From contig CATNEN010000003.1 in assembly GCA_950097015.1 (NCBI GenBank), positions 11,594,001 to 11,658,000 on the forward strand: a stretch of DNA of 64,000 bases, in the 5' to 3' direction. Below the pieces are notes generated by a model. That model was not told the origin of the DNA, made no database searches, and saw only the letters and a list, made by a program, of their open reading frames with translations. The DNA is from Macrostomum hystrix (Eukaryota; Animalia; Platyhelminthes). Below are positions 15,061-53,366 of this stretch, one piece after another; position 1 is the first letter of the stretch, and each line of letters starts with the position of its first letter. The translations under genes were made by a program, and so were the position numbers.

Positions 15061-15140
15061 TAGATATTATTAATCTAATTTGATCCTCTTTATCGTGTTT
15101 ATCCATTTCCCAATATCCCCATTTCCCTCGCTAATCGAAG

Positions 15141-16468
15141 GTCTTTGTCGCCTGCCTGCGTCTTCCTCCCAAGGCGGCAACCGGATCCGAGTCAACTGGC
15201 TCCACCGAGCCACCGACACGGCCTACTGCGTGTCCGTCTCCCTCGCCAGGGCGGTGTCGGCCAGCGACCTCGCCAGCCGGCTGCTGACCTCCCCAGGCCG
15301 CGTTAGGCCGGCCAGTCAAACTGTGTGTCAAATTCGACAACTGCTGATTGGCGGCGAAGAGGACGACGATGACGCAATCGTTGCCATGACAACCATAACG
15401 GCTTCGCTGAAATGTCCTCTATCGTGCGCCCGCATCGAGCTGCCGGTTCGCGCCGATGATTGCCGGCACATTCAATGCTTCGACGCCAAGGCTTATTTGT
15501 TGATGAACGAACGGCGAGCCACCTGGCGATGTCCGTCCTGCGATCGGCCAGCACCCTATGCCAGCCTTCACGTCGATGCTCACTTCAGAGCCGTGCTAGC
15601 CGAAGCTCCGCTCGGCGTTGATGTTGTGCGCTTCCTTGACGATGGCACTTGGCAACCAGCCACAGCGAGCGCATCATCAGAACCAGCAGCAGCAGCGGCA
15701 GCATCAGAGGCAGCAGCTGCCGTGTCTTCTCGCCAATCCCATCAATTCGCATCTGAAAACTTCTCCAGTGTTGTCATTGACGACGACGAAGACAACGATG
15801 AAGAGGACGCGTCTGCGGCTAAGCGCCAGAAGATCAGCAATGCTGAAGACAACAGGCGCTCATGCCAGCCTTCTCAGCATCCCGATATCATCGTTGTGGA
15901 TCTGACAGCGGATGATTCCAACGATTCAAACTGCTCAGCGTCAGCTGGCACAGATTCGAACTCTGACAATCCCCAGTCAGTCAGTTTCACTATGTACAAT
16001 GATCCACCAATCAGTGCCGGTGTGATGGTAACCCCTGTTCAATCTCCCTTGTCATCGCCAACGCGCTCCACTTCTCAGACACCGTCGCCACCGCCTCGCA
16101 CGCCGGTTGAGAGGCGGCAGCAGCAGCAGCAGCAGAGGGCGTCATCTTCGAATTGCACGTTTCCGGCGCCAAACAGCTCCAACGGCTTTTTCATGTCGCA
16201 TGATTTGCCCACCTATCTGGGAAATTATCCCACTTTACCAGTTTATCAATCCATGCACAATTCTTCCTCGTCAGCGCATTCCACATTGCCATCTTCATCT
16301 TCTGGCAGCTCGTCTGCCGTGATGTTTCCATTTGGCTTGCCGTCAAATCTTGACTTGATGAGCGGCGGAGTCAGCGGAGGCGGAGCTGCTGCTAGCAACT
16401 CGGACAGTCGGGACAGCGGCGGCGGCAACAATTTATTTGACGGCTATGACGGATTGTTCTCGGTTTGA
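15141..16468 (+). CDS. PIAS: PIAS paralog A exon 4: end of PINIT, SP-RING (zf-MIZ), SIMs, S-rich tail; full protein ~1070 aa
   Basis: SLKCPLSCARIELPVRADDCRHIQCFDAKAYLLMNERRATWRCPSCD is an SP-RING. SIMs VVIDDDED and IIVVDLTADD are present. Acceptor gaag|GT at 15140/15141 is in frame. Confidence 0.93.
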
Positions 16469-21962: not shown

Positions 21963-22650
21963 GTCTTTGTCGCGTCGGCAACTCGGCAATCAATCGCATT
22001 CGCACCTGCTGGCAATACCGACCTTGGGGCACCGGTCACTGCCTGTCAGTCAGCTTGGCTAGAGTTCTCACACCGACTCAGCTAATCCAGCGCATGCTTT
22101 CCAACTACGACAAAATCTGCTCCGAAGATCAAAGCCGGCGTCAGATACGTCAATTGTTGCTAGGCGACAATAGTAACGACAATAATAACAATATGGACGA
22201 TGCTAGCAACGGCGCCGAAGTTGAAGCTACGGTTGCCATGACAACGCTAACCGCTTCGCTACGCTGTCCGCTGAGTCGATCGAGAATAGAGCTGCCGATT
22301 CGTTCAAACGATTGTCGCCACATCCAGTGCTTCGATGCCAGAAGCTATTTAGTTATGAACGAGCGAAAGCCTACCTGGAAGTGTCCGTGCTGTGACAAGT
22401 CCGCCCCGTTTGCCAGTCTGCGAGTTGACGCTCTCTACCAGTCTGTACTAGCCGATGCGCCACTCACTGTTGAAGTTGTTCAATTCCTGGACAATGGCTC
22501 CTGGAAGCCGATGGATTCCAGTGACACCGCTGCCAGATCTGCCAGCTCCGGCACAGCCGCTGTCATTGAACTGGACGATGACGAAACACCGGTTGAAGCT
22601 CCCAAAAGAAAGAAGAGCAAGCAGAGTGCGCCTTGTTTGAAACCACCTGG

Positions 22651-22685
<35 letters not shown>

Positions 22686-22753
22686 AGCGCCGTGCTCAGT
22701 CTCAGCAGTCAGACCCAATCACAGTAGTTGATCTCACAGCCGATTCAGATTAA
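21963..22753 (+). CDS. PIAS: PIAS paralog B exon 4: SP-RING and SIMs; full protein ~584 aa
   Basis: SLRCPLSRSRIELPIRSNDCRHIQCFDARSYLVMNERKPTWKCPCCD is an SP-RING. SIMs VIELDDDE and terminal ITVVDLTADSD*. The acceptor is at the same position as in paralog A (ag|GTCTTTGTCG). Confidence 0.92.
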
Positions 22754-30352: not shown

Positions 30353-30679
30353 CTCAAACATTCATCCATTCTTACACATCACGATTGTTTGCCATGAAAT
30401 TTGTGGGGCTGAAGTGCCTTTTTCTATGGAAACAGAGCCCGGGAAAGGCGGGTCCAAAGTTGTCTGGGTTTGAGGTCTGGATTTTGGGAAATATTTACAT
30501 TTTAATATTAAGGAATATTCGAAGGATTTAGGAAAATATTTTGGTATTCGACATGAGACTCCGAATCCAAGTTTGGGATCTGATTAGGAAAGCCTATTGA
30601 GTGTTAACTTTGGGATCACATGGTTTGCTCTTGGCATTGTGATTAACAGTGAAAAGAAATTCACATAGCACTGGCTTTG

Positions 30680-33600
30680 CCTGAAGTTCGATGGTCACTG
30701 GCCTGAAGTTCGATAGTCGCTGGTCTTAAGTTCGATAGTCGCTGGCCTGAGGAGGTATGACTCACTTACAAAGCACGAGCCTGAAGTTCGATGGTCACTG
30801 GCCTGAAGTTCGATGGTCACTGGCCTGAAGTTCGATAGTCACTGGCCTGAAGTTCGATGGTCACTGGCCTGAAGTTCGATAGTCGCTGGTCTTAAGTTCG
30901 ATAGTCGCTGGCCTGAGGAGGTATGACTCACTTACAAAGCACGAGCCTGAAGTTCGATGGTCACTGGCCTGAAGTTCGATGGTCACTGGCCAGAAGTTCG
31001 ATGGTCACTGGCCTGAAGTTCGATGGTCACTGGCCTGAAGTTCAATAGTTATTGGCCTGAAGTTCGATGGTCACTGGCCTGAGGTTCGATGGTCACTGGC
31101 CTGAAGTTCGATAGTCAGTGGCCTGAAGTTTGAGGGTCACTGGCCTGAAGTTCGAGGGTCACTGGCCTGAAGTTCGAGGGTCACTGGCCTGCAGTTCGAG
31201 GGTCACTAGCCTGCAGTTAAATAGACACTTGCTTGAGAAGGTAGGACTCACCCACAAAGCACGAGCCTGACTTCGACCCTCGACTGGTCTTAAGTTCGAT
31301 AGTCACTGGCCTGAAGTTCGATGGTCACTGGCCTGAAGTTCGATGGTCACTGGCCTGACGTTCGATGGTCACTGGCCTGAGGAGTTAGGACTCACTCACA
31401 AAGCACGAGCCTGAAGTTCGATAGTCAGTGGCCTGAAGTTCGATAGTCAGTGGCCTGAAGTTCGATAGTCAGTGGCCTGAAGTTCGATAGTCAGTGGCCT
31501 GAAGTTCGATAGCCAGTGGCCTGAAGTTCGAGGGTCACTGGCCTGAAGTTCGAGGGTCACTTGCCTGCAGTTAAATAGACACTTGCTTGAGAAGGTAGGA
31601 CTCACTCACAAAGCACGAGCCTGAAGTTCGATGGTCACTGGCCTGAGGAGGCATGACTCACCCACAAAGCACGAGCCTGACTTCGACCCTCGACTGGTCT
31701 TAAGATCGATAGTCACTGGCCTGAAGTTCGATGGTCACTGGCCTGAAGTTCGATAGTCGCTGGTCTTAAGTTCGATAGTCGCTGGCCTGAGGAGGTAGGA
31801 CTCACTCACAAAGCACGAGCCTGAAGTTCGATGGTCACTGGCCTGAAGTTCGATGGTCACTGGCCTGAAGTTCGATGGTCACTGGCCTGAAGTTCGATGG
31901 TCACTGGCCTGAAGTTCAATAGTTATTGGCCTGAAGTTCGATGGTCACTGGCCTGAGGTTCGATGGTCACTGGCCTGAAGTTCGATAGTCAGTGGCCTGA
32001 AGTTCGAGGGTCACTGGCCTGAAGTTCGAGGGTCACTGGCCTGAAGTTCGAGGGTCACTGGCCTGCAGTTCGAGGGTCACTAGCCTGCAGTTAAATAGAC
32101 ACTTGCTTGAGAAGGTAGGACTCACCCACAAAGCACGAGCCTGACTTCGACCCTCGACTGGTCTTAAGTTCGATAGTCACTGGCCTGAAGTTCGATGGTC
32201 ACTGGCCTGAAGTTCAATAGTTATTGGCCTGAAGTTCGATGGTCACTGGCCTGAGGTTCGATGGTCACTGGCCTGAAGTTCGATAGTCAGTGGCCTGAAG
32301 TTCGAGGGTCACTGGCCTGAAGTTCGAGGGTCACTGGCCTGAAGTTCGAGGGTCACTGGCCTGCAGTTCGAGGGTCACTAGCCTGCAGTTAAATAGACAC
32401 TTGCTTGAGAAGGTAGGACTCACCCACAAAGCACGAGCCTGACTTCGACCCTCGACTGGTCTTAAGTTCGATAGTCACTGGCCTGAAGTTCGATGGTCAC
32501 TGGCCTGAAGTTCGATGGTCACTGGCCTGACGTTCGATGGTCACTGGCCTGAGGAGTTAGGACTCACTCACAAAGCACGAGCCTGAAGTTCGATAGTCAG
32601 TGGCCTGAAGTTCGATAGTCAGTGGCCTGAAGTTCGATAGTCAGTGGCCTGAAGTTCGATAGCCAGTGGCCTGAAGTTCGAGGGTCACTGGCCTGAAGTT
32701 CGAGGGTCACTTGCCTGCAGTTAAATAGACACTTGCTTGAGAAGGTAGGACTCACTCACAAAGCACGAGCCTGAAGTTCGATGGTCACTGGCCTGAGGAG
32801 GTATGACTCACCCACAAAGCACGAGCCTGACTTCGACCCTCGACTGGTCTTAAGATCGATAGTCACTGGCCTGAAGTTCGATGGTCACTGACCTGAAGTT
32901 CGATAGTCGCTGGGCTTAAGTTCGATAGTCGCTGGCCTGAGGAGGTATGACTCACTTACAAAGCACGAGCCTGAAGTTCGATGGTCACTGGCCTGAAGTT
33001 CGATGGTCACTGGCCAGAAGTTCGATGGTCACTGGCCTGAAGTTCGATGGTCACTGGCCTGAAGTTCAATAGTTATTGGCCTGAAGTTCGATGGTCACTG
33101 GCCTGAGGAGGTAGGACACACTCACAAAGCACGAGCCTGACTTCGATGGTTACTGGCCTGAAGTTCGACAGTTATTGGCCTGAAGTTCGATGGTCACTGG
33201 CCTGAGGAGGTAGGACTCACTCACAAAGCACGAGCCTAAAGTTCGATGGTCACTGGCCTGAGGTTCGATGGTCACTGGCCTGAGGAGGTAGGACACACTC
33301 ACAAAGCACGAGCCTGACTTCGATGGTTACTGGCCTGAAGTTCGATAGTCACTGGCCTGAGGAGGTAGGACTCACTCACAAAGCACGAGCCTAAAGTTCG
33401 ATGGTCACTGGCCTGAGGAGGTAAGACACACTCACAAAGCACGAGCCTGAAGTTCGATACTCACTGGCCTGAACAGGTACGACTCACTCACAAAGCACGA
33501 GCCTGACTTCGATGGTCACTGGCCTGAAGTTCGATAGTCACTGGCCTGAAGTTCGATAGTCACTGGCCTGAAGTTCGATAGTCACTGGCCTGAAGTTCGA

Positions 33601-36092
33601 TAGTCACTGGCCTGAAGTTCGATAGTCACTGGCCTGAAGTTCGATAGTCACTGGCCTGAAGTTCGATAGTCACTGGCCTAAAGTTCGATAGTCACTGGCC
33701 TGAAGTTCGATAGTCACTGGCCTGAACAGTTACGACTCACTCACAAAGCACGAGCCTGACTTCGATGGTCACTGGCCTGAAGTTCGATAGTCACTGGCCT
33801 GAAGTTCCATGGTCACTGGCCTGAGGAGGTAGGACTCACTCACAAAGCACGAGCCTGAAGTTCGATAGTCACTGGCCTGAGGTTCGATTGTCACTGGCCT
33901 GAACAGTTACGACTCACTCACAAAGCACGAGCCTGAAGTTCGATAGTCACTGGCCTGAAGTTCGATAGTCACTGGCCTAAAGTTCGATAGTCACTGGCCT
34001 GAACAGTTACGACTCACTCACAAAGCACGAGCCTGAAGTTCGATAGTCACTGGCCTGAAGTTCGATAGTCACTGGCCTGAAGTTCGATAGTCACTGGCCT
34101 GAAGTTCCATGGTCACTGGCCTGAGGAGGTAGGACTCACTCACAAAGCACGAGCCTGACTTCGATGGTTACTGGCCTGAAGTTCGATAGTCACTGGCCTG
34201 AAGTTCAATAGTTATTGGCCTGAAGTTCGATGGTCACTGGCCTGAGGAGGTAGGACTCACTCACAAAGCACGAGCCTGAAGTTCGATAGTCACTGGCCTG
34301 AGGTTCGATTGTCACTGGCCTGAACAGTTACGACTCACTCACAAAGCACGAGCCTGAAGTTCGATAGTCACTGGCCTGAAGTTCGATAGTCACTGGCCTA
34401 AAGTTCGATAGTCACTGGCCTGAACAGTTACGACTCACTCACAAAGCACGAGCCTGAAGTTCGATAGTCACTGGCCTGAAGTTCGATAGTCACTGGCCTG
34501 AAGTTCGAGGGTCACTGGCCTGAAGTTCGAGGGTCACTTGCCTGCAGTTAAATAGACACTTGCTTGAGAAGGTAGGACTCACTCACAAAGCACGAGCCTG
34601 AAGTTCGATGGTCACTGGCCTGAGGAGGTATGACTCACCCACAAAGCACGAGCCTGACTTCGACCCTCGACTGGTCTTAAGATCGATAGTCACTGGCCTG
34701 AAGTTCGATGGTCACTGGCCTGAAGTTCGATAGTCGCTGGTCTTAAGTTCGATAGTCGCTGGCCTGAGGAGGTATGACTCACTTACAAAGCACGAGCCTG
34801 AAGTTCGATGGTCACTGGCCAGAAGTTCGATGGTCACTGGCCAGAAGTTCGATGGTCACTGGCCTGAAGTTCGATGGTCACTGGCCTGAAGTTCAATAGT
34901 TATTGGCCTGAAGTTCGATGGTCACTGGCCTGAGGAGGTAGGACTCACTCACAAAGCACGAGCCTGACTTCGATGGTTACTGGCCTGAAGTTCGACAGTT
35001 ATTGGCCTGAAGTTCGATGGTCACTGGCCTGAGGAGGTAGGACTCACTCACAAAGCACGAGCCTAAAGTTCGATGGTCACTGGCCTGAGGTTCGATGGTC
35101 ACTGGCCTGAGGAGGTAGGACACACTCACAAAGCACGAGCCTGACTTCGATGGTTACTGGCCTGAAGTTCGATAGTCACTGGCCTGAGGAGGTAGGACTC
35201 ACTCACAAAGCACGAGCCTAAAGTTCGATGGTCACTGGCCTGAGGAGGTAAGACACACTCACAAAGCACGAGCCTGAAGTTCGATACTCACTGGCCTGAA
35301 CAGGTACGACTCACTCACAAAGCACGAGCCTGACTTCGATGGTCACTGGCCTGAAGTTCGATAGTCACTGGCCTGAAGTTCGATAGTCACTGGCCTGAAG
35401 TTCGATAGTCACTGGCCTGAAGTTCGATAGTCACTGGCCTGAAGTTCGATAGTCACTGGCCTGAAGTTCGATAGTCACTGGCCTAAAGTTCGATAGTCAC
35501 TGGCCTGAAGTTCGATAGTCACTGGCCTGAACAGTTACGACTCACTCACAAAGCACGAGCCTGACTTCGATGGTCACTGGCCTGAAGTTCGATAGTCACT
35601 GGCCTGAGGAGGTAGGACTCACTCACAAAGCACGAGCCTGAAGTTCGATAGTCACTGGCCTGAGGTTCGATTGTCACTGGCCTGAACAGTTACGACTCAC
35701 TCACAAAGCACGAGCCTGAAGTTCGATAGTCACTGGCCTGAAGTTCGATAGTCACTGGCCTAAAGTTCGATAGTCACTGGCCTGAACAGTTACGACTCAC
35801 TCACAAAGCACGAGCCTGAAGTTCGATAGTCACTGGCCAGAAGTTCGATAGTCACTGGCCTGAAGTTCGATAGTCACTGGCCTGAAGTTCCATGGTCACT
35901 GGCCTGAGGAGGTAGGACTCACTCACAAAGCATGAGCCTGACTTCGATGGTTACTGGCCTGAAGTTCGATAGTCACTGGCCTGAAGTTCGATGGTCACTG
36001 GCCTGAGGAGGTAGGACTCACTCACAATGCACGAGCCTAAAGTTCGATGGTCACTGCCCTAAATTTTGATAGTCACTGTCCTGAAGTTCGAT
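30680..36092. repeat. Compound satellite: 22-bp unit (gcctgaagttcgatggtcactg) interspersed with a 34-bp unit (gcctgaggaggtaggactcactcacaaagcacga); ankyrin-derived, with higher-order duplications
   Basis: Visible array with roughly 40 copies of the 34-mer by eye. The 34-mer aligns to the coding strand of the ankyrin exon at 41894-43500. Confidence 0.93.
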
Positions 36093-36256
36093 GTTAAGTT
36101 TGCGCAAATGGCGGAGGGCGGCAACGGAGCTGCAGGATTTGAAGCCGTTTTCATATCCACATTTATCATCGCTTTGCAGTCGATCATGGAATTACTGATA
36201 AAATGTGTCTTTTGGTTTGCTTTGGTTGAATTGTCTACTTGGCATCCACGTTAGGG

Positions 36257-37806
36257 TCACAAACACACACAGCACCTGCAGCATTTTGATCCACAACAAG
36301 TTTTTCTTTCTTTGTATTCAAGTTGACGCCGACTCGTATACTCAAATGAATATTCGAATTGGTTTTGGCGATCTTCACCTTGACTGCTCAGCCTCTCAAT
36401 CTTCAGCTGCAGCCACCCCGGCAGGCGGCACAGCTCGTGAGTGATTCTTCTGCGCAGCCACCGCAGCAGCTCCAGATCGCCGCAGATTGCCGCAGCAACC
36501 AGCAGCTCTTGCTCATCAGCATCCTCCGTCTGAGCCACATCCCAGATCCAGTCCTGATCGCTCCCGTCTCCTGCTCCTGTCAGATCATTGCGAAGAGCCC
36601 GCAGCAGAGCGTCAAAGTTCAGGTAGAAGAATGTTCCGTAGTTCTTCATCTGCAGCGGAAAGCAGTCGGTAATGACTTCGTGCTCAATCGGCAGCTTCGG
36701 TCGCTTGTCAAACTCGAAGCAGAATTTCCAGGCGGAGTCTCGGCTCCTCAGGTGCTGCCACACAAAGTCCTCAGTTGCCTCACTCGCCGACCTCTCAGCT
36801 CCCCAATCGATGCCTCTGCTCGCACTGAACGGCCAGCAGTCGCTCACAACTCTCGCTGCACTGAGTCGGTCGCCGAACTTCAGGCAGGCCAGCGCTCTGA
36901 GAGACTGCCGCGCTGATCGGGCGCAGTCTGGCAGTTTGTTGATCAGCTCTGCGAGACTCTCTCGGGACTGCTGGCTGCGGTCTCCATCGGACAGACGAAG
37001 CACCGACTCTCTCACGATGTCGTAGATCTCGTGGAACTCGCATGTCTTGGCTTCTGACACGGGTCTGACTTGAAGAGTCGGCAGGATGAGGAACGGGTGG
37101 AAGTGGAATCGGCCAGAGTCGGTGACGGGTCGCAGACTGTCCTCGAACTGCAGCAGCAGCTGAGGCAGCTCAGCCATGGCGTCTCTCAATGCACCGGCTG
37201 CCCGATTCAACGCTTCGCTCACTCTCTCAGCTGATGTGGGCGACTTCAAGCCTTTCAGGTACACAGCGGCATCGCTCAGGAAGAAGTGCTCGAGGATCCG
37301 ACCATTAGGTTTTTCTGATCTGCAGCCGCTCTCCACACCGTCAAGCAGCATCTGCAGCGAGCGTCTCGTGAGACTCACGAGATTCTCCGGCTTCCACTGC
37401 TCAGCCGGTGTCTCCTCCAGCATTCGGAACGTGACGGTCTTTGCGTGATAGGACTTGAAGCCGACGTTTGAGATCTTCTTCTTCAGCAGCCACTTGAGTG
37501 TGACGAACAGCTGGCCTTGCAGAGTGCTGAGACTCCGCAGCAGTCGCCTCTCCAGGAAGCTGCTGCTCACTCGGAGCTGCTGGCCCCCCATTCCGGGAGG
37601 AGCTGCGTGCACCACGTGACAGGGCGATGAGGCAGAGGTGAGGTCTCGCTGGAGTGACTGCAGCACGGACTGGGGGATGTTGGAGTTGGAGAGTCTTGGT
37701 GGCTGTAGCGGCGCGATGGGAGGGTAGCGACAGAGGCGACGGGCGGTGACTTCGTCCACAGCCGGTCTCAGGGTGGAGCCATTTAGATTCCAGGCTGGGT
37801 TGGAGG
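36257..37806 (-). CDS. Ankyrin-cGLR gene exon 3: C-terminal part of the Mab-21/cGAS-like NTase domain, helical domain, Cys-rich CaaX tail
   Basis: Acceptor tttctccag|CC at 37807/37806, phase 1. Mab-21 signatures: VDEVTA (third acidic residue position), [28 protein letters not shown]-x3-NL, LEHFFL. Ends [13 protein letters not shown]. Confidence 0.88.
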
Positions 37807-39145
37807 CTGGAGAAATTGGAAATGCGAGAAATATGGAAAATGCTATCAATTTTCCATTGGATAGACACAAAATATTTCTCTGTAATCTAATCAGGAAAAA
37901 ATAGTGCAAAGATGGTTTGTAGCTGCGATATTTGAAAATTTAGTGCAGACTAGAAACTTTGCCCCCTACGGAGGGGAGCACGTGCACGATAATTTTCAAT
38001 TCTTCCTTGCTTCTTTAGATTCTTATGGGTATTTTTCCTGAGCACTGTATACAGCTCTTCAGTCCATGTATTGGGGAGGTCACCAGCTCACTCAAATTTC
38101 TACTGTAACCTTCAGCTGGCTGAACTGAATAAATACGAGGTTATGATTCTAGCTCTTGGACAAGCATCGTTTCCTCAGGCTGAGATTCGAACTCCCGGCG
38201 TCTCTGCCAGAAGCTTCCAAGCTGTACTAAAAATATTTATTGCATAAGAGTGGATGCATTCAACTTAGAAAGTGAAAGTTTACTTAAGAGGGACCACGAA
38301 AAATGATATAATTAAGTTAGAACTCCTTGAGTGTCAAGTTACAATGTGACTATTGCAAAGCTGCCATCATTTGGTCAGTGTCGCAGAAATGGGCCGAATG
38401 GGTTAATCTTCAGATGTAGCCAATCGGCGGGGTTTTCCTGCCAACTTAAAATAGGAAAATTTTCCTATCTACTGGATAACTAGCTTCTATATTGCTTGTA
38501 AGAATGGGCTGTTCGGAGTATTGTTGAAAATCAATGGACATGTACTGGCATAATTAAAGAATCACAGAGAAAGAATTTTGTAAAAACGGCAAAAGAATAT
38601 AATAGATTAGAAATCACAGAAATTTGCAATGACGCTTCCAAAAGCTGTGTACAACGGTTCAGTCCATGGACTGGGGAGGTCACCTCAGAAACTGTAATTT
38701 TAACTCGTATACGTTTGCTTCTACCCGTTTTACTGGCTGCTGAATTGGAAACTTTCAGCTTTTAGGAACTTTCGTTTTGCCGTTCAAAGAGGAATTTCCC
38801 AAATCAGGTTCACGACTTATTACTTTAATTTTACACACGTGACTGTGAAAGTATTGCGAGCCTAAGAAACAAAGACAAACTTTGCTTCTCTTCACTGAGT
38901 ACACTGCGCGATGAGCGCTAAGCCTCTGTTTGGTTCGCAGAAGAAGTGAAATCGGCTATAAAAACAAACTTTATATTTTTGCTTAGAACTTTCTTGCTCT
39001 GGCTCTGGATTTCAAACCTGGACTGAGCATTTGTTTGTTTCCCTGTTTGTTGTTTGCTTTAGAAAGCCAAAGAGGATCAGCAGGCCAAACACATGCTCAA
39101 TTCTTGTCCCAGCCATCCCGACAGTCTCTGGCAGGAAATTCTCAC

Positions 39146-39495
39146 CGAATCCGGAGCTCAGGATGTGGCCATTGCTGAGCTCCACTGTCTGAGCAGCCTC
39201 CACTCGGTCGCACTCGCACACATCTCTCGGGTGAATCGGCCTTCCTGGAATCAGCTGAATAACATCGATGTCAGAGTCGATGTCAGTTCCGCCATCCAGA
39301 GAGACCAGGCTGTTGCCCCAGGCCTCAGAGAAGCTGCCCACAGCGAACCAGCCGTCATCGTTCATTCTCTTCCTGAGAACATCCTGCAAGACGTCAGCCA
39401 CAGCGATCTGCAAGGCGGCTCTGAAGTCCACGAATCCCGACTGAGAGAGCTTGGAGTGCAGCTGCTGGCTCAGCTCTGCGTCGCTGGGTGCGGCT
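39146..39495 (-). CDS. Ankyrin-cGLR gene exon 2: nucleotidyltransferase catalytic motif
   Basis: Acceptor cacccttcag|A at 39496/39495. Encodes AVGSFSEAWGNSLVSLDGGTDIDSDIDVI (hGS...[DE]h[DE]h motif of the cGAS/DncV/Mab-21 NTases). Donor G|GTGAGA at 39146/39145 is in frame with exon 3. Confidence 0.85.
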
Positions 39496-39690
39496 CTGAA
39501 GGGTGAGAGGAGGCGGCATTGCTGAGTTTCAGTGAGGCTGGGAGGCTCTGAAGGGTGAGAGGAGGCGGCAGTGCTGAGTTTCAGTGAGGCTGGGAGGCTC
39601 TGAAGGGTGAGAGGAGGCGGCAGTGCTGAGTTTCAGTGAGGCTGGGAGGCTCTGAAGGGTGAGAGGAGGCGGCAGTGCTGAGTTTCTGCA
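39496..39690. repeat. 52-bp unit, about 3.7 copies, duplicating the exon-2 splice acceptor
   Basis: gaagggtgagaggaggcggca... recurs at 39498, 39550, 39602 and 39654. Confidence 0.9.
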
Positions 39691-39869
39691 CTGCAAAAGT
39701 GAAAAAAAAATTATATTAAATAATTAAGAAAATTTTGAAAATATTTTGTAGGCTGTGTTTTTGCGAATGATACACTACGGAGTCAAAAGGTGTCACTTTC
39801 AAAAAACCCAAATCCATAATCCAATATTTAATTCCTGCAATATATAATCCCAAATCTGTTTTTAAAAAT

Positions 39870-40912
39870 CCCAAACTTATAATATTGCATTCCAAACCTG
39901 TTCTATTGCATCCCAAAACTTTAATATTGCTTCCCTGACATGTAATCTAGAATTCAACGCATGAAAAAATTGCATCCCAAGCTGTAATATTGCATCCCAA
40001 TCTGTAATATTGCATCCCAATCTGTAATATTGCATCCCAATCTGTAATATTGTATCCCAATCTGTAATATTGCATCCCAATCTGTAATATTGTATCACAA
40101 GCTGTAATATTGCATCCCAATCTGTAATATTGCATCCCAATCTGTAATATTGCATCCCAATCTGTAATATTGCATCCCAATCTGTAATATTGCATCCCAA
40201 TCTGTAATATTGCATCCCAAGCTGTAATATTGCATCCCAAAACTGTAATATTGTTTCCTGACATGTAATATTGAACGGGACACATGTAATATTGCATCTC
40301 AAACCTGTAATATTGCATCCCAAAACTGTAATATTGCATCACAAGCTGTACTATTGCATCCCAAAACTGTAATATTGTTTCCTGACATGTAATATTGAAC
40401 GGGACACATGTAATATTGCATCTCAAACCTGTAATATTGCATCCCAAAACTGTACTATTGCATCCCAAGCTGTAATATTGCATCCCAAGCTGTAATATTG
40501 TATCACAAGCTGTTCTATTGCATCCCAAAACTGTAATATTGCTTCCCTGACATGTAATATTGAATCGGACACATGTAATATTGCATCCCAATCTGTAATA
40601 TTGCATCCCAATCTGTAATATTGTATCACAAGCTGTAATATTGCATCCCAATCTGTAATATTGCATCCCAATCTGTAATATTGCATCTCAAACCTGTAAT
40701 ATTGCATCCCAAGCTGTAATATTGCATCCCAATCTGTAATATTGCATCCCAATCTGTAATATTGCATCCCAATCTGTAATATTGCATCCCAATCTGTAAT
40801 ATTGCATCCCAATCTGTAATATTGCATCACAAGCTGTAATATTGCATCCCAAGCTGTAATATTGCATCTCAAACCTGTAATATTGCATCCCAAGCTGTAA
40901 TATTGCATCCCA
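39870..40912. repeat. 20-bp minisatellite (tgcatcccaatctgtaatat) in intron 1 of the ankyrin-cGLR gene
   Basis: Visible array. It explains the MQYYRLGCNITDWDAILQ ORFs. Confidence 0.95.
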
Positions 40913-41893
40913 AGGAATAACATTGAATCTCTAACCAAGGACCACTGGAATACGTCGTTCTAGTATAGTAGTCCTTGTCCCTAACCTGTAGTATTACATC
41001 CCAAACCTGTAATTTTTTCCTCCAAAATCAAATCCCACATTCATAAACTGAGACTTAGGATAAATTCTTAAACTGGAGCCCATTCCGCTGTATTGGCAAC
41101 TAAGCATGTTGAACAAGTTGAAAGATTATTAGCTCGTATTCAATTAAATAAAAACTGAAATTCTTTAAAAAATGTTTTTTCACGAGGTTTTTACAGATTT
41201 TTACAAGGGGATAGCAGAGCACCTTTTTCTTCACGGATTTTGTGACTGTGTCCAACTGGAGGTGGATCAACTCAAGGCTTATCAAGGCTCATCTATTAGC
41301 ATTAGTTTCCGTATTTCTTCGATTTCTTTCAAGCTGAATTTGTCAACATTCGATTCGACATTTTTCATTTTTCAATTCTGTAGCAAAAATATGTTAAGCT
41401 CTTGAGAACGAAACCGCTCGGAAATTAGACTTTTGTCTTCTTTGTTTAATAATCAAATTAATTAAATACATTAATAAAATAAGTTTCTTATATTTATCTT
41501 TAGCCTTACGATTTATTTATCAGTACATACAACATACCCTGCTAATGTTACGAGTAATAATGGTACGCTCGTATGAAGATCAACTTTTCAGGACACAAGC
41601 TTATATAGTTCATAGCAGCAACATATGTAATAATACCAAAAGAAGAGCTTTGGATCTGCTTTAAATAAGAACGGTTACCATTAAAATTTTAGGGTGAAAA
41701 ACTGAAGTGTATCTCCGTAGTGTATACATTTATTTTTAATCTACAATAACTGACTGACGCACAATCAGTTTGCAACATCGGTTCTCAGATTTCGAATCTA
41801 ATAGCTCAGAGCACGCTGGCTGCGAATTGATTTTCAAAATGTCTCTGAAAACGGATTGCTCAGGTCAGTTTTACAGGAAACAGGAGCTCCTAC

Positions 41894-43866
41894 CTGTTCT
41901 GCTTCTCAGGCAAAGGCGCGGAGGATCCACGGCTCAGCAGGTCAACCACTCGGTCATGGCCGACTTTCGTGGCGATTCGCAGAGCAGCTTCCAGCAAGTC
42001 CGGGCGCTGAACGACTTTCATGAGTGACTCGACAACACGGAGGTGGCCGTTCTGTGATGCAATGTAGAGAGGTGAGGAACCATCGAATGCTTGAAGATTG
42101 ACGTCGGCTCGTGCTTTGATGAGTGAGTCGACCACCTCCTTATGGCCATTTTGTGATGCAATGTACAGAGGTGAGCAGCCATCGACTCCTTGAAGATTGA
42201 CGTCGGCTCGTGCATTGATGAGTGATTCGACCACCTCCTTATGGCCATTTTGTGATGCAATGTAGAGAGGTGAGGAGCCAGTTTTTCTTTGAAGATTGAC
42301 GTCGGCTCGTGCTTTGATGAGTGAGTCCACCACCTCCTTATGGCCATTTTGTGATGCAATGTAGAGAGGTGAGCAGCCCTCGAATGCTTGAAGATTGACG
42401 TCGGCTCGTGCTTTGATGAGTGAGTCCACCACCTCCTTATGGCCATTTTGTGATGCAATGTAGAGAGGTGAGGAGCCCTCGAATGCTTGAAGATTGACGT
42501 CGGCTCGTGCTTTGATGAGTGAGTCCACCACCTCCTTATGGCCATTGCAGGATGCAATGTAGAGAGGTGAGTAGCCAGTATTTGCTTGAAGATTGACGTC
42601 GGCTCGTGCTTTGATGAGTGATTCGACCACCTCCTTATGGCCATTTTGTGATGCAATGTAGAGAGGTGAGGAGCCAGCTTTTCTTTGAAGATTGACGTCG
42701 GCTCGTGCTTTGATGAGTGATTCGACCACCTCCTTATGGCCATTTTGTGATGCAATGTAGAGAGGTGAGGAGCCAGCTTTTCTTTGAAGATTGACGTCGG
42801 CTCGTGCTTTGATGAGTGATTCGACCACCTCCTTATGGCCATTTTGTGATGCAATGTAGAGAGGTGAGGAGCCATCGACTTCTTGAAGATTGACGTCGGC
42901 TCGTGCTTTGATGAGTGATTCGACCACCTCCTTATGGCCATTTTGTGATGCAATGTAGAGAGGTGAGCAGCCATCGACTTCTTGAAGATTGACGTCGGCT
43001 CGTGCATTGATGAGTGATTCGACCACCTCCTTATGGCCATTTTGTGATGCAATGTAGAGAGGTGAGGAGCCAGTTTTTCTTTGAAGATTGACGTCGGCTC
43101 GTGCATTGATGAGTGATTCGACCACCTCCTTATGGCCTTGCTGTGATGCAATGTAGAGAGGTGAGCAGCCAGTATTTCTTTGAAGATTGACGTCGGCTCG
43201 TGCATTGATGAGTGATTCGACCACCTCCTTATGGCCATTTTGTGATGCAATGTAGAGAGGTGAGGAGCCATCGACTTCTTGAAGATTGACGTCGGCTCGT
43301 GCATTGATGAGTGAGTCGACCACCTCCTTATGGCCTGCAAGTGATGCAATGAAGAGAGGTGAGCAGCCAGTATTTGTTTGAAGATTGACGTCGGCTCGTG
43401 CATTGATGAGTGAGTCGACCACCTCCTTATGGCCTGCAAGTGATGCAATGAAGAGAGGTGAGCAGCCAGTATTTGTTTGAAGATTGACGTCGGCTCGTGC
43501 TTTGATGAGTGATTTCACCAGTCGGAGGTGACCATATGCAGATGCAATCCACAATGCCGTCTCCCCTCTCCAGTTCTGCTTGTCTACATCCGCAATGGCT
43601 CGGATGAGTCTCACGAGAATTTCATGCCTTCCTAATCGGCAAGCGAGCATTGCTGGAGTATAAAATGAGCCTGCAAAGGCGATGAAGGCATCGAGGCTCC
43701 CGCCGCTGACAATGAAACGCTCAACGACCTCCACTCGGTCATCTCTGATGGCTGCCAGCAGCTCCTCGTCGGTGAGTTCTTCTGCGTCTTCTCGCTGCTG
43801 TGAGGAATGAACTGAGTTCATCAGGTACACCAGGACAGCCGTGAGTATTCTCAGCAAGGGAAACAT
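41894..43866 (-). CDS. Ankyrin-cGLR gene exon 1: ~18 ankyrin repeats (15 near-identical 33-aa/99-bp units); read unspliced it is a 658-aa ankyrin-only ORF ending at 41890
   Basis: Repeated G-x-SPLYIAS-x-x-GHKEVV-x-SLI-x-ARADVNLQ. The ORF stop lies inside a donor, AAC AG|GTAGGA (41894/41893, phase 2), which joins in frame to 39495. Confidence 0.9.
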
Positions 43867-43996
43867 TTTGCAGGTGTCTGTTTGTGAGTTGGGAAAGTGG
43901 CAAATGAGGTCGAGTAGGTCAGCTCAGCCTTTGGCTTGAGACTTTGCTTTTGCTGTCCGCTGCAGCCAACCAGAAGCGTTCTTTGCTGCTGGAGTC

Positions 43997-46900
43997 TCAT
44001 TGGCTGCTGAGCTGCTCAGAGAAGAGAAGACGAGAAGAGAAGAGGAGAAGAGAAGATAAGAGAAAAGAAGAGAAGAGAAGAAGAGAAGAGAAGAGAAGAG
44101 GAGAGAAGAGGAGAAGAGGAGAGAAGAGAAGAGAAGAGAAGAGAAGAAGAGAAGAGAAGAGAAGAGAAGAGAAGAGAAGAGAAGAAGAGAAGAGGAGAGA
44201 AGAGGAGAAGAGAAGAGAAGAGGAGAAGAGGAGAGGAGAGAAGAGAAGAGAAGAGAAGAGAAGAAGAGAAGAGAAGAGAAGAGAAGAGAAAAGAAAAGAA
44301 GAGGAGAAGAGAAAAGGAGAGAAGAGGAGAAGAGAAGAGAAGAGAAGAGAAGAGGAGAAGAGAAGAGAAGAGAAGAAGAGAAGAGAAGAGGAGAAGAGAA
44401 GAGAAGAGGAGAAGAGAAGAGAAGAGAACAGAAGAGAAGAGAAGAGAAGAAGAGAAGAGAAGAGAAGAGAAAAGAAAAGAAGAGAAGAAGAGAAGAGAAG
44501 AGAAGAGGAGAAGAGGAGAGGAGAGAAGAGAAGAGAAGAGAAGAGAAGAAGAGAAGAGAAGAGAAGAGAAGAGAAGAGAAGAAGAGAAGAGAAGAGAAGA
44601 GAAAAGAAGAGAAGAGAAGAGAAAAGAAGAGAAGAGAAGAGAAGAGAAGAGAAGAGAAGAAGAGAAGAGGAGAGAAGAGAAGAAGAGAAGAGAAGAGAAG
44701 AGAAGAGAAGAGGAGAGGAGAAGAGAAGAGAAGAGGAGAAGAGGAGAAGAGAAGAGAAGAGAAGAGAAGAAGAGAAGAGAAGAGAAGAGAAGAGAAGAGA
44801 AGAAGAGAAGAGAAGAGGATAAGAGAAGAGAAGAGAAAAGAAGAGAAGAGAAGAAGAGAAGAGGAGAGAAGAGGAGAAGAGAAGAGAAGAGGAGAAGAGG
44901 AGAAGAGAAGAGAAGAGAAGAGAAGAGGAGAAGAGAAGAGAAGAGAAAAGAAGAGAAGAGAAGAAGAGAAGAGAAGAGAAGAGGAGAAGAGAAGAGGAGA
45001 AGAGAAGAGGAGAAGAGAAGAGAAGAGGAGAAGAGAATAGAAGAGAAAAGAAGAGAAGAGAAGAAGAGAAGAGGAGAAGAGAAGAGAAGAGAAGAGGAGA
45101 AGAGGAGAGGAGAGAAGAGAAGAGAAAAGAAAAGAAGAGGAGAAGAGAAAAGGAGAGAAGAGGAGAAGAGAAGAGAAGAGAAGAAGAGAAGAGAAGATAA
45201 GAGAAGAGAAGAGGAGAAGAGAAGAGAAGAGGAGAAGAGAAGAGAAGAGGAGAAGAGAGGAGAAGAGAAGAGAAGAGAAGAGAAGAGAAGAAGAGAAGAG
45301 AAGAGAAGAGAAGAGGAGAAGAGAAGAGAAGAGAAGGGAAGAGAAGAGAAGAAGAGAAGAGAAGAGAAGAGAAGAGAAGAGAAGAGAAGAGAAGAGAAGA
45401 GAAGAGGAGAAGAGAAGAGAAGAGAAGGGAAGAGAAGAGAAGAAGAGAAGAGAAGAGAAGAGAAGAGAAGAAGAGAAGAGAAGAGAAGAGAAGAGAAGAG
45501 AAGAGAAGAAGAGAAGAGGAGAGAAGAGGAGAAGAGAAGAGAAGAGGAGAAGAGGAGAGGAGAGAAGAGAAGAGAAGAGAAGAGAAGAAGAGAAGAGAAG
45601 AGAAGAGAAGAGAAAAGAAAAGAAGAGGAGAAGAGAAAAGGAGAGAAGAGGAGAAGAGAAGAGAAGAGAAGAGAAGAGGAGAAGAGAAGAGAAGAGAAGA
45701 AGAGAAGAGAAGAGGAGAAGAGAAGAGAAGAGGAGAAGAGAAGAGAAGAGAACAGAAGAGAAGAGAAGAGAAGAAGAGAAGAGAAGAGGAGAAGAGAAGA
45801 GAAGAGAAAAGAAGAGAAGAGAAGAAGAGAAGAGGAGAGAAGAGGAGAAGAGAAGAGAAGAGGAGAAGAGGAGAAGAGAAGAGAAGAGGAGAAGAGGAGA
45901 AGAGAAGAGAAGAGAAGAGAAGAAGAGAAGAGAAGAGGAGAAGAGAAGAGAAGAGAAGAAGAGAAGAGAAGAGAAGAGGAGAAGAGAAGAGGAGAAGAGA
46001 AGAGGAGAAGAGAAGAGAAGAGGAGAAGAGAATAGAAGAGAAAAGAAGAGAAGAGAAGAAGAGAAGAGAAGAGAAGAGAAGAGGAGAAGAGGAGAGGAGA
46101 GAAGAGAAGAGAAAAGAAAAGAAGAGGAGAAGAGAAAAGGAGAGAAGAGGAGAAGAGAAGAGAAGAGAAGAGAAGAGGAGAAGAGAAGAGAAGAGAAGAA
46201 GAGAAGAGAAGAGAAGAGAAGAGAAGAGGAGAAGAGAAGAGAAGAGGAGAAGAGAAGAGAAGAGGAGAAGAGAAGAGAAGAGAACAGAAGAGAAGAGAAG
46301 AGAAGAAGAGAAGAGAAGAGAAGAGAAGAGAAGAGAAGAGAAGAGAAGAGGATAAGAGAAGAGAAGAGAAGAGAAGAGAAGAAGAGAAGAGAAGAGAAGA
46401 GAAGAGAAGAGAAGAGAAGAGGAGAAGAGAAGAGAAGAAGAGACGAGACGAGAAGAGAAGAGGAGAAGAGGAGAAGAGGAGAAGAGAAGAAAGGAAAAGA
46501 AGAGGAGAAGAGGAGTGATTCTTCTGCGCAGCCGCCGCAGCAGCTCCAGATCTCCGCAGATCGCCGCAGCAACCAGCAGCTCCTGCTTATCCGCATCCTC
46601 CGTCTGAGCCACATCCCGTATCCAGTCCTGATCGCTCCCGTCTCCTGCTGCTGTCAGATAATTGCGAAGAGCCCGCAGCAGAGCGTCAAAGTTCAGGTAG
46701 AAGTAGTTGCCGTAGTTCTTCATCTGAGACAGAAAGCAGCCGGCAAAGACTTCGTGTTCAATCGGCAGCTTCGGTCGCTTGTAAAACTCGAAGCAAAATT
46801 TCCAGGCGGAGTCTCGGCTCCTCAGGTGCTGCCACACAAAGTCCGCAGTGGCCTCACTTGCCGACCTCTCAGCCCCCCAATCGATGCCTCTGCTCGCACT

Positions 46901-47965
46901 GAACGGCCCGCAGTCGCTCACAACTCTCCGGCTTCCGAGATTCTCCGGCTTCCACTGCTCAGCCGGTGTCTCCTCCAGCATTCGGAACGTGACGGTCTTT
47001 GCGTGATAGGACTTGAAGCCGACGTTTGAGATCTTCTTCTTCAGCAGCCACTTGAGTGTGACGAACAGCTGGCCTTGCACAGTGCTGAGACTCCGCAGCA
47101 GTCGCCTCTCCAGGAAGCTGCTGCTCACTCGGAGCTGCTGGCCTCCATTCCGGGAGGAGCTGCGTGCACCACGTGACAGGGCGATGAGGCAGAGGTGAGG
47201 TCTCGCCTGAGCGACTGCAGCACGGACTGGGGGATGTTGGAGTTGGAGACTCTTGGTGGCGGCGGGCGTCGACTCGGTCCACAGCCGGTCTCAGGGCCCA
47301 GCCTCTTTGAGTCCAGGCTGGGTTGGAGGCTGGAGAAATGGGAAATGCGAGAAACATTGCAAATGCCATCAGATTTCAATTAGAAACAAAACTAATTTTC
47401 AATTGTATTTCATGTCTGTTGTCTGATGTAAAGAAATAGAAATCAAACAAAATTTAGAAACTTTTGCCCTTTCTCAAAGAGGGACAAAGAGCAACTCGAA
47501 TGAATCGTCTGGGCTCCCCGAAGATGGGCAACCATTGCTAGTTAAATAACAGTTTATAGCTAATGTGCAGGATTCATGCAAAGTGGCACGAGCAACAACT
47601 CCTGTCAATGAGTGATTTAAGTGCAACAAAGAATATGATATTAGATTTTGGCGTATAAAAATCAATAAGTACAATGAATGAATATAGTATCATTATTCAC
47701 TGAGTTCACTGAGCGATGAGCACTAAGCCTCTGTTTGGTTCCCAGAGGAAGCGCGCCGAAAGAAAAATCACACTTTATTTGCGAAATTTCTTGCTCTGGC
47801 TCGGATTTTTAAATCTGGACTGAACATTTGCTTGTTTTCCTTGTTTGTTGTTTGCTTTAGAAAGCCAAAGAAGATGAGCAAGCCAAACATATGCTCAATT
47901 CTTGTCCCAGCCATTCCGACAGTCTCTGGCAGGAAATTCTCACCGAATCCGGAGCTCAGGATGTG
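43997..47965 (-). pseudogene. Degenerate tandem paralog of the cGLR (Mab-21) gene
   Basis: 46515-47329 is highly similar to 36440-37806 but has a ~520-bp internal deletion, small frameshifting indels and the (GAAGA)n interruption. 47700-47965 matches 38890-39166 but keeps only ~22 bp of the catalytic exon, so the GS/DxD motif is lost. Confidence 0.85.
44020..46514. repeat. ~2.5 kb (GAAGA)n polypurine microsatellite
   Basis: Almost pure A/G sequence built from gaaga and gagaa units. Confidence 0.97.
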
Positions 47966-53354: not shown

Positions 53355-53366
53355 AGTACTTCTCAC

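What the first reader, a model, noticed from the sequence alone, without database searches (positions are those of the whole stretch)
30680..36092. The 5.4 kb satellite just downstream of the ankyrin-cGLR gene is built from inverted copies of the ankyrin coding sequence
Seen: the satellite 34-mer with flank (+ strand) TGGCC-TGAGGAGGT--AGGACTCACTCA-CAAAGCACGAGCC aligns to the ankyrin coding strand TGGCCATAAGGAGGTGGTGGACTCACTCATCAAAGCACGAGCC (GHKEVVDSLIKARA) at 37 of 43 columns, with a 24/25 core. The 22-mer variants GAAGTTCGATGG and TTCGAGGG also echo the variable-loop codons GAAGTCGATGG (EVDG), TTCGATGGT (FDG) and TTCGAGGG (FEG), but these matches are short and weaker. The gene is on the minus strand and the satellite begins ~165 bp past its stop codon. 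A read-through or long-3'UTR transcript would therefore carry ~40 segments antisense to its own ankyrin repeats. Inference, in three alternatives: (a) a satellite born from a collapsed inverted ankyrin paralog; (b) a cis source of fold-back dsRNA or small RNAs that silences the ankyrin-cGLR family, notable because dsRNA is a known cGLR ligand; (c) a recombination or gene-conversion partner for the array.
Basis: partly seen in the sequence, partly recalled or inferred. Interest (0 to 1): 0.82.

Follow-up and report, generated by a model that had tools for sequence, protein, structure and literature searches.

The report
Satellite seeded by inverted ankyrin-repeat fragment
A 5.4-kb stretch of short tandem repeats just behind a flatworm immune-sensor-like gene really does contain about 40 eroded, back-to-front pieces of that gene's own ankyrin-repeat code, but it looks like a by-product of a genome that turns almost anything into repeats, and a regulatory role is untested.

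Summary
Observation confirmed. The array at 30679-36092 consists of about 177 units of 22 nt and 42 units of 34 nt. The 34-mer with its flanks matches the ankyrin coding strand of the neighbouring minus-strand gene at 37 of 43 columns, with a 24/25 core. The alignment scores 52 against 19.3 +/- 2.3 for shuffles (0 of 1000 reach it), and only in inverted orientation.

The title overstates the finding. Only the 34-mers, 26% of the array's bases, are demonstrably ankyrin-derived. The 22-mer echo is weak.

The satellite family lies at the same spot, always inverted, behind 15 of 18 close copies of this gene subfamily on contigs C2, C3, C18, C20 and C38. The copies share flanks, so there was one origin, then co-duplication with the gene. 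The parent-like ankyrin word occurs only in this subfamily.

Nothing points to selection on the antisense part. It is no better conserved than the 22-mer, and the array does not fold on itself. The 34-mers are irregularly spaced, and 45% of the window is assorted minisatellites.

Transcription and small RNAs could not be tested. Alternative (a) is supported in refined form; (b) and (c) remain open and unlikely.

The scan's first stage noted the same idea at another paralogue (s1-850726).

The parts
30679..36092 (+). Minisatellite array of about 177 units of 21-23 nt and 42 units of 34 nt. The + strand of the 34-mer resembles the ankyrin coding (sense) strand.
   Evidence: TRF, unit parse, alignment and shuffles
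33350..33391 (+). Example of the ankyrin-like stretch: the end of a 22-mer, a 34-mer, and the first bases of the next unit.
   Evidence: Local alignment with score 52, 37/43 columns
42502..42547 (-). The ankyrin codons (helix-2 part, GHKEVVDSLIKARA) that the example matches. Equivalent sites recur every 99 nt.
   Evidence: Three repeats, at 42304, 42403 and 42502, match the core with 0 mismatches.
42044..43514 (-). Ankyrin-repeat coding array: period 99, 14.9 copies, 92% matches.
   Evidence: TRF; Pfam Ank_2 E 4e-137
41890..43866 (-). Exon 1 of the neighbouring gene: signal-like N-terminus plus ankyrin repeats. The ORF runs to a GT donor near 41892.
39132..39690 (-). Approximate exon 2. It includes a 52-nt x 3.8 coding tandem repeat at 39492-39686. 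Exon limits were not determined.
   Evidence: No Pfam or PDB hit for this piece alone.
36257..37880 (-). Exon 3, the cGAS/Mab21-like C-terminal part. It ends in a Cys-rich tail, with the stop at 36257-36259.
   Evidence: Pfam Mab-21_C E 0.0016, below the cut-off; PDB cGAS chains E 3.4e-5; M. lignano 'Mab-21 domain-containing' homologues
36093..36256 (-). The 164 nt between the stop codon and the array. It holds no AATAAA or ATTAAA. It is conserved at 85-95% in 9 loci; a tenth, L018, matches in part at 76%.
30354..30678 (+). Distal flank of the array. It is found in only 11 places in the genome, each at the far edge of a paralogous array.

Best explanation
This is a non-coding minisatellite. 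Its 34-nt unit descends from the most conserved part of the 99-nt ankyrin repeat (the helix-2 codons) of this very gene subfamily.

Inferred history:
- A short piece of ankyrin coding DNA was copied in inverted orientation into the spot about 165 bp behind the stop codon of the subfamily's founder gene. A strand or template switch during replication or repair of the repeat array is the most likely route.
- The piece lost its reading frame through three small deletions.
- It was then amplified together with a 22-nt unit of unclear origin by the slippage and unequal exchange that fill this genome with minisatellites.
- Gene and array were later copied together by segmental duplication to at least 15 places. 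There the arrays grew or shrank independently, from 0.35 to about 11 kb.

Most likely the array has no dedicated function.

Shown here: the similarity, its orientation, the restriction of the parent-like word to the subfamily, the shared junctions, and the variable array size.

Inferred: the template-switch origin, the timing (before the subfamily expanded), and neutrality.
For: Similarity well beyond chance.
- The alignment scores 52, and 0 of 1000 shuffles reach it.
- The core pattern hits 11 sites, all in the ankyrin array, with 0 expected.

Polarity. The shared stretch is part of the ankyrin repeat that Pfam matches at E 4e-137, so the protein constrains it. The satellite copy carries three indels that break the frame.

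Source.
- The exact 24-nt ankyrin word occurs 73 times in the genome, with 0 in the reversed control. All hits are on C3, C18 and C38, in the same gene clusters.
- The satellite's 22-nt core word occurs 194 times, with 0 in the control. The 100 listed places all lie at these loci.

One origin, then co-duplication.
- 15 of 18 exon-3 copies with at least 86% identity have the family directly 3' of them.
- No unit lies on the other strand in any of these 15 arrays.
- The distal flank is found in 11 places only, each at an array edge. The proximal flank is shared by 10 loci.

A general tandemising habit.
- 29,089 of the window's 64,000 bases lie in 34 tandem arrays of unrelated units.
- A neighbouring 14-mer satellite is shared by 7 of the 19 fetched loci, all gene copies of the close subfamily.
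- The two more distant gene copies (70% and 59% identity) carry other, unrelated satellites 3' of them.

No sign of constraint on the antisense part. Mean per-site agreement with the consensus, averaged by hand from the per-site percentages that one search printed, is about 96% for the ankyrin-like core (34-mer positions 15-34). It is about 93% for the 22-mer, or 95% without its one A/G polymorphic site (1629 22-mers and 351 34-mers).

Literature. A 2025 review states that tandem repeats can arise from virtually any sequence, and often from other repeats (PMC12692304, passages seen).
Against: The array has been kept behind 15 of 18 gene copies, always antisense to the gene. Common descent explains this, but it does not exclude use.

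No AATAAA or ATTAAA lies between the stop codon and the array in 12 of 14 loci. Transcripts could therefore run into the array and carry about 40 antisense segments. Each is predicted to pair with an ankyrin repeat at -68 kcal/mol, against -30.3 +/- 4.2 for shuffles.

Variants that restore an ankyrin base are frequent in some arrays. One occurs 17, 12 and 1 times in three C18 arrays; another 3, 5 and 2 times in three other arrays. This could mean exchange with the gene rather than drift.

The consensus 34-mer is identical in 12 of 13 arrays although the flanks differ by 13-18%. That is usual for satellites, but constraint would give the same result.

The origin of the 22-mer is unresolved.
Confidence: 0.68

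Rival explanations
1. Cis-antisense regulator. The gene's transcripts, or an independent minus-strand transcript, run through the array. Its roughly 40 antisense ankyrin segments pair with ankyrin mRNAs of the subfamily, or are processed into piRNAs or siRNAs that dampen the whole ankyrin-cGAS-like family. This would work like Su(Ste) against Stellate, or like hairpin-RNA loci born from their targets in Drosophila.
For: - The orientation is antisense in 15 of 15 arrays.
- No canonical poly(A) hexamer lies between the stop and the array in 12 of 14 loci.
- The predicted duplex of one antisense unit with an ankyrin repeat is -68 kcal/mol, against -30.3 +/- 4.2 for shuffles.
- The matched stretch is the part of the repeat that is most uniform across repeats and paralogues, so one small RNA could reach many targets.
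- The genus has an active piRNA pathway with uni- and bidirectional clusters (PMC4604429, passages seen).
Against: - There are no expression or small-RNA data.
- The longest perfect runs are 13 and 11 nt, split by a bulge.
- The array alone folds worse than shuffles on both strands, with z +3.4 and +2.4, so it is not a hairpin locus.
- 34-mer spacing is irregular, from 56 to 320 nt. Only 6 of 39 intervals are 99 or 100 nt, so no long continuous dsRNA can form with the 99-nt array.
- The core is no better conserved than the 22-mer.
- Two arrays have almost or wholly lost the 34-mer: L013 has 1 tail and L015 has 0.
- The orientation is inherited, so it is not 15 independent events.
- In M. lignano the piRNA knock-downs de-repressed transposons but not a conserved gene set (PMC4604429).
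Confidence: 0.14
2. Recombination or gene-conversion partner. The inverted ankyrin-like units exchange sequence with the ankyrin array, or promote inversions or breaks that diversify it.
For: - Array-specific variants that restore ankyrin bases reach appreciable frequency in some arrays.
- Position 14 of the 34-mer, the most variable one at 66% consensus, lies beside the third base of the valine codon (GTC or GTG) that also varies among the ankyrin repeats. The 2-nt gap in the alignment makes exact column correspondence uncertain.
Against: - The shared tracts are only 11-13 nt perfect and 43-46 nt in all, which is short for homologous exchange.
- With several hundred 34-mers and about 5% variation per site, some variants must match the ankyrin base by chance.
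- No inversion between gene and array is seen in any of 15 loci.
- I did not fetch the paralogues' ankyrin exons, so array-by-gene co-variation was not tested.
Confidence: 0.06
3. Decayed whole inverted paralogue. A tail-to-tail copy of the entire gene lost everything but its ankyrin array, which then degenerated in place into the satellite.
For: - The 100-nt higher-order period (three 22-mers plus one 34-mer) in 33654-36092 is close to the 99-nt ankyrin period.
- The 22-mer echoes the loop codons at a collinear position, weakly (15 of 2000 and 42 of 2000 shuffles).
Against: - Only 6 of 39 intervals between 34-mers are 99 or 100 nt.
- No remnant of the other exons or of the gene's 5' end lies in the flanks. 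In blastn against the whole window, the gene body matched only the tandem paralogue, and the distal flank matched nothing outside itself and the adjoining 16-mer array.
- No unit in 14 other arrays extends the match beyond about 65 columns.
Confidence: 0.08
4. Transposon-borne satellite that captured an ankyrin fragment and inserted behind the genes independently.
For: Satellites often arise inside transposons (PMC12692304, passages).
Against: The distal flank occurs in only 11 places, all at these arrays. The core word is confined to these loci in the 100 of 194 places listed. The junctions are the same in the paralogues.
Confidence: 0.02

Closest known systems
Satellite DNA seeded from pre-existing repeats or from any local sequence (the 'seed'/library view in satellite reviews; PMC12692304, passages seen)
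   Same: Short non-coding units lie in head-to-tail arrays, with many unrelated families in one genome. Copy number changes fast between loci (0.35 to about 11 kb here) while the unit consensus stays put.
   Different: Part of the seed here is a protein-coding tandem repeat of the adjacent gene, inverted. The family is confined to one gene subfamily's 3' flanks rather than to heterochromatin.
Su(Ste)/Stellate of Drosophila melanogaster (recalled from general knowledge; no paper read here)
   Same: A tandem array descended from a gene family could give antisense RNA against that family.
   Different: As I recall, Su(Ste) units keep long homology to the target, lie on another chromosome, and have proven antisense transcription and piRNAs. 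Here the homology is 43-46 nt per unit, the array is in cis directly behind each target gene, and no RNA evidence exists.
Hairpin-RNA (hpRNA) endo-siRNA loci born from their target genes in Drosophila simulans (PMC10317233 and PMC10292708; search listing and start of abstracts only)
   Same: The sequence is derived from the target gene in inverted orientation. The targets are young, amplified gene families.
   Different: hpRNA loci hold both arms and fold into long hairpins. This array folds worse than shuffled sequence, and its only possible partner arm is the coding exon itself, 6-12 kb away.
Inverted-duplication model of new plant miRNA genes (PMC3237417; search listing and start of abstract only)
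   Same: An inverted copy of part of a gene serves as raw material for a regulator of that gene.
   Different: No hairpin is present here, the organism is an animal, and the units are amplified into a satellite.

Membership tests
Minisatellite / satellite DNA | Head-to-tail tandem copies of a short unit | tested here: met
   TRF finds periods 22, 44, 56, 78 and 100 over 30679-36092. The parse gives 224 pieces, 219 of them of 21-23 or 34 nt.
Minisatellite / satellite DNA | Non-coding | tested here: met
   Three indels against the ankyrin codons break the frame. Among ORFs of at least 50 aa overlapping 36000-44100, the only one touching the array is a 62-aa one at its very edge, 36066-36254. The rest of the array was not scanned for ORFs.
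Minisatellite / satellite DNA | Several arrays with a shared consensus and variable copy number | tested here: met
   There are 15 arrays of 0.35 to about 11 kb. The 34-mer consensus is identical in 12 of 13 arrays that have more than two 34-mers.
Decayed ankyrin-repeat gene (pseudogene array) | 99-nt (33-residue) periodicity | tested here: not met
   Intervals between 34-mers range from 56 to 320 nt. Only 6 of 39 are 99 or 100 nt.
Decayed ankyrin-repeat gene (pseudogene array) | Similarity over the whole repeat | tested here: not met
   The match covers 43-46 of 99 nt. The best extension in 14 other arrays reaches about 65 columns, score 60. The rest is only weakly similar.
hpRNA / fold-back small-RNA locus | Both arms in one locus, folding into a long hairpin | tested here: not met
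   A 300-nt stretch folds worse than 200 shuffles on both strands, with z +3.43 and +2.43. No unit lies in the opposite orientation in any array.
hpRNA / fold-back small-RNA locus | Homology to a target gene in antisense | tested here: met
   The predicted duplex is -68 kcal/mol, against -30.3 +/- 4.2 for shuffles.
hpRNA / piRNA source (Su(Ste)-like) | Transcription of the antisense strand and small RNAs of defined size | not testable with these tools
   No RNA data are on hand.
Transposon-borne satellite | Flanks dispersed in the genome independently of the gene | tested here: not met
   The distal flank occurs in 11 places, all at the far edge of these arrays.
Ankyrin-fused cGAS-like receptor (the neighbouring gene) | Ankyrin repeats | tested here: met
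   Pfam Ank_2 E 4e-137 and Ank E 1.9e-135.
Ankyrin-fused cGAS-like receptor (the neighbouring gene) | Mab21/cGAS nucleotidyltransferase fold with catalytic residues | tested here: inconclusive
   Pfam Mab-21_C scores 19 bits against a cut-off of 24.1. PDB cGAS chains match at E 3.4e-5 over 59 residues. Homologues are named 'Mab-21 domain-containing'. Exon 2 alone gave nothing. Catalytic residues were not examined. Exons were searched apart and never joined.

The most novel reading that the evidence does not exclude
Each gene of this expanded ankyrin-cGAS-like subfamily carries in its own 3' region a satellite of about 40 antisense copies of the one ankyrin segment that is uniform across all repeats and paralogues. 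Read-through transcripts would then feed small RNAs, or local duplexes, that hold the whole family down. This would be a built-in, copy-number-scaled brake on an innate-immune sensor family, born from the gene's own coding repeats.
Probability: 0.12. Interest if true: 0.75.

Novelty: new member of a known kind. Interest (0 to 1): 0.36.

Why it matters
As it stands, this is a clean, datable example of a protein-coding tandem repeat seeding a non-coding satellite next to its own gene. Fifteen paralogous arrays show how fast such arrays expand and shrink.

It would matter more if the arrays are transcribed. They would then be a cis-linked antisense source against a rapidly expanding family of candidate immune sensors, in an animal group where cGAS-like signalling is hardly studied. 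[quoted passage not shown]

A practical point: gene models and read mapping in this family will be confused by the ankyrin-like 34-mers.

Tried and rejected
1. Intermediates. I scanned 19 fetched loci plus the window in 120-nt steps against the ankyrin exon. Loci with the satellite peak at 43-60. Loci without an array peak at 24-29: L015 (only 2 units of the 22-mer), L016-L018, L020 and L021. No unit has a near-complete ankyrin repeat.

2. Remains of an inverted paralogue in the flanks. In blastn against the window, the gene body matched only the tandem paralogue fragment at 46513-47965. The distal flank matched nothing but itself and the neighbouring 16-mer array.

3. The 22-mer as a shortened 34-mer. 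The alignment is no better than for shuffles: 3628 of 5000, and 1406 of 5000 for the remainder. Rejected as unsupported. The free-end-gap scoring I used is a blunt test.

4. Transposon origin. Rejected.

5. Recurrence in other subfamilies. Only two outgroup copies (70% and 59% identity) could be compared with their own gene bodies. Neither has an inverted match, and their 3' satellites are unrelated.

6. Transcript evidence through protein databases. The best hits are M. lignano proteins at 66% identity or less, with none from this species.

7. Poly(A) hexamer scan. No canonical hexamer lies before the array in 12 of 14 loci. None lies just beyond it either, except in the window. The scan is therefore uninformative about where transcripts end.

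8. Literature.
- 'Macrostomum' plus 'satellite DNA' found 8 papers, of which 7 were listed. None of the listed titles or abstract openings concerns this family.
- Three further searches gave comparators only.
- I found no description of an ankyrin-derived satellite in these searches. That is not proof of absence.

9. Supplements were closed and not requested. Table S2 of PMC9980059 (domain architectures) could bear on the gene family. Supplemental Tables 4-5 of PMC4604429 (piRNA clusters and piRNA-producing transcripts of M. lignano) could bear on the small-RNA reading.

10. Not done:
- a tree of exon-3 copies to decide whether the three satellite-less copies (C3, 10.67-10.75 Mb) lost the array or predate it;
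- co-variation of each array with its own gene's ankyrin repeats;
- any joined (spliced) protein model.

The contig is flatworm, not human.

Full report
**What is there.**
- The window is G000:C3:11594001-11658000 of a 220-Mb assembly. Earlier notes of this scan call it a Macrostomum-type flatworm.
- The closest database proteins are Macrostomum lignano proteins at no more than 66% identity, so it is a related species, not M. lignano itself. It is not human.
- TRF shows a tandem array at 30679-36092 with a basic period of 22 and higher orders of 44, 56, 78 and 100.
- Cutting at the recurring unit start gives 224 pieces: 165 of 22 nt, 11 of 21, 1 of 23, 42 of 34 and 5 odd ones. The 34-mers thus make up 1428 of 5414 nt, or 26%.

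**The neighbouring gene.** It lies on the minus strand.
- Exon 1 (43866-41890) encodes a signal-like start and an ankyrin array. Pfam gives Ank_2 E 4e-137. TRF gives period 99, 14.9 copies and 92% matches at 42044-43514.
- A middle exon lies near 39690-39132.
- The last exon (about 37880-36257) scores below Pfam's cut-off for Mab-21_C (19 against 24.1 bits). It matches cGAS chains of the PDB at E 3.4e-5. Its homologues carry the name 'Mab-21 domain-containing protein'.
- I searched the exons apart and did not join them. An earlier follow-up of this scan (s1-842789) reached the same gene model.
- The stop codon is at 36257-36259, 165 bp from the array's last unit.

**Checking the observation.**
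The alignment is 33350-33391 against 42502-42547, with 37 of 43 columns, a 24/25 core and three small gaps. It scores 52.
- The other orientation scores 18.
- None of 1000 dinucleotide shuffles of the query (mean 19.3, sd 2.3, max 37) reaches 52. Nor does any of 1000 shuffles of two ankyrin units (mean 16.6, max 28).
- The 25-nt core, written with N at the gap and allowing up to two mismatches, hits 11 sites in the window. All are in the ankyrin array on the minus strand. None is expected.
- The second part, echoes of the ankyrin loop codons in the 22-mer, is weak. Shuffles reach the observed local score in 15 of 2000 (ATGG variant), 42 of 2000 (AGGG variant) and 319 of 2000 (ATAG variant, the commonest). 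The best matches do lie at the collinear place in the repeat. A whole 56-nt unit descended from one 99-nt repeat with two larger deletions is therefore possible but not shown.
- The 22-mer is not demonstrably a shortened 34-mer either.

**Where else the satellite occurs.**
- A 200-nt piece of the array finds 386 matches in the genome. The 150 listed ones fall into clusters on C3, C18 and C38.
- The last exon's protein finds 95 matches at E <= 1e-20. Eighteen of them have at least 86% identity and cover most of the exon.
- I fetched 10 kb behind each of these 18 copies; the locus behind one of them also covers the flank of an 82% copy. I also fetched 10 kb behind two more distant copies (70% and 59% identity).
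- The family lies directly behind 15 of the 18 copies. Fourteen have 34-mer tails. One, on C2, is a remnant of two to three 22-mers.
- Three copies on C3 at 10.67-10.75 Mb, the 82% copy and the two distant copies lack it.
- In all 15 arrays every unit has the same orientation relative to the gene. There are no hits on the other strand.
- The 325 nt beyond the array are found in only 11 places in the genome, each at the far edge of one of these arrays. The 164 nt between stop and array are shared by 10 loci.
- The array was therefore present, at this junction and in this orientation, before the gene and its surroundings were copied. The 15 cases count as one event.
- Array length now ranges from 0.35 kb (C3, 10.217 Mb) to about 11 kb (C20).

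**Source and polarity.**
- The exact 24-nt ankyrin word that the 34-mer resembles occurs 73 times in the genome, with 0 in the control. All hits are on C3, C18 and C38, in the same gene clusters.
- The satellite's own 22-nt core word occurs 194 times, with 0 in the control. All 100 listed places lie at these loci.
- The shared stretch is part of the ankyrin repeat that Pfam recognises, so the protein constrains it. The satellite copy has lost the frame. The direction is therefore ankyrin to satellite, and the donor was this subfamily.
- No array holds a longer ankyrin-like unit; the best score is 60, about 65 columns. The flanks hold no remains of other exons.
- A short inverted insertion therefore fits better than a collapsed whole paralogue.

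**Does it do anything?** The indirect evidence I could compute is neutral or negative.
- Conservation. I pooled 1629 22-mers and 351 34-mers from 14 arrays. The ankyrin-like core agrees with the consensus at about 96% per site. The 22-mer agrees at about 93%, or 95% without its one polymorphic site (my hand averages of the per-site values).
- Folding. The array does not fold on itself. A 300-nt stretch is less stable than 200 of 200 shuffles on the minus strand and 199 of 200 on the + strand, with z +3.43 and +2.43.
- Spacing. Intervals between 34-mers run from 56 to 320 nt, and only 6 of 39 are 99 or 100 nt. A transcript through the array could form only isolated helices of about 40 bp with the ankyrin mRNA, each with bulges. 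One such helix is predicted at -68 kcal/mol, against -30.3 +/- 4.2 for shuffles.
- Background. 29,089 of the window's 64,000 bases lie in 34 unrelated tandem arrays. A neighbouring 14-mer satellite is shared by 7 of the 19 fetched loci, all copies of the close subfamily. The two distant gene copies have other satellites behind them with no inverted match to their own gene bodies.

In favour of a role:
- No AATAAA or ATTAAA lies between stop and array in 12 of 14 loci.
- The antisense orientation holds everywhere.
- The genus has a piRNA pathway (PMC4604429, passages).

Transcription and small RNAs could not be tested.

**Comparison with what is known.**
- A recent review says tandem repeats can arise from virtually any sequence, and often from other repeats (PMC12692304, passages). 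This array is such a case, with the twist that part of the seed is the neighbour gene's own coding repeat, inverted.
- It resembles Su(Ste)/Stellate (recalled) and Drosophila hpRNA loci (PMC10317233 and PMC10292708, listing and abstract openings only) only in being target-derived and antisense. It fails the hairpin test, and the RNA tests are open.
- Ankyrin-fused cGLRs are catalogued (PMC9980059, passages). The gene itself is therefore not new either.

**Verdict.** A regulatory role is possible but unsupported. The scan's first stage noted the same idea at another paralogue of this genome (s1-850726); that note has no follow-up.

Noticed in passing
window 46513-47965 (minus), with 44018-46512: This is a truncated tandem paralogue of the cGAS-like gene. 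Its pieces are 87-98% identical to 36439-39167, with an internal deletion. Its 3' end abuts a 2.5-kb (AGAGA)n array instead of the ankyrin-like satellite. An equivalent fragment lies at C3:11681589-11682242, so the whole unit of about 44 kb (gene, satellite and fragment) is itself tandemly repeated on C3, near 11.63, 11.67 and 11.72 Mb.
   Followed up: partly
window about 36370-36396 (minus); L013 9880-9991, L018 9590-9810, L019 6190-6280: A 21-nt stretch sits near the end of the coding region. It is a single copy in the window's gene and is expanded into a tandem run of about 4 to 10 or more copies in three paralogues. That would add 7-residue repeats to the protein's C-terminal part. Tandemisation thus also reaches into coding sequence.
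   Followed up: partly
window, whole: 29,089 of 64,000 bases lie in 34 tandem arrays of unrelated units with periods 3-99. They include a 10-kb array of a 16-mer at 53952-64000 and a 20-mer array inside the gene's intron (39868-40913).
   Followed up: no
window 39492-39686 (minus): A 52-nt unit is repeated 3.8 times at 99% identity at or near the start of the gene's middle exon. 52 is not a multiple of 3, so if it is exonic the frame shifts from copy to copy. Exon limits here need transcript data.
   Followed up: no
window 15080-16468 and 22055-22753 (+): Two paralogous ORFs have a cysteine/histidine pattern that I recall as the SP-RING (MIZ/PIAS-type) zinc finger. They are convergent with the cGAS-like gene. 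No family search was run.
   Followed up: no
L015 (C2:4868000-4877990), about 200-1300 nt behind the gene's end: In the C2 copy a different element has been inserted between the gene's end and the remnant of the satellite. It has a 39-nt satellite and inverted arms. This gene copy also has two in-frame TGA codons.
   Followed up: no
window 53363-53794 (minus): An ORF whose sequence looks to me like part of a sodium:dicarboxylate/amino-acid transporter (recalled resemblance, not searched).
   Followed up: no
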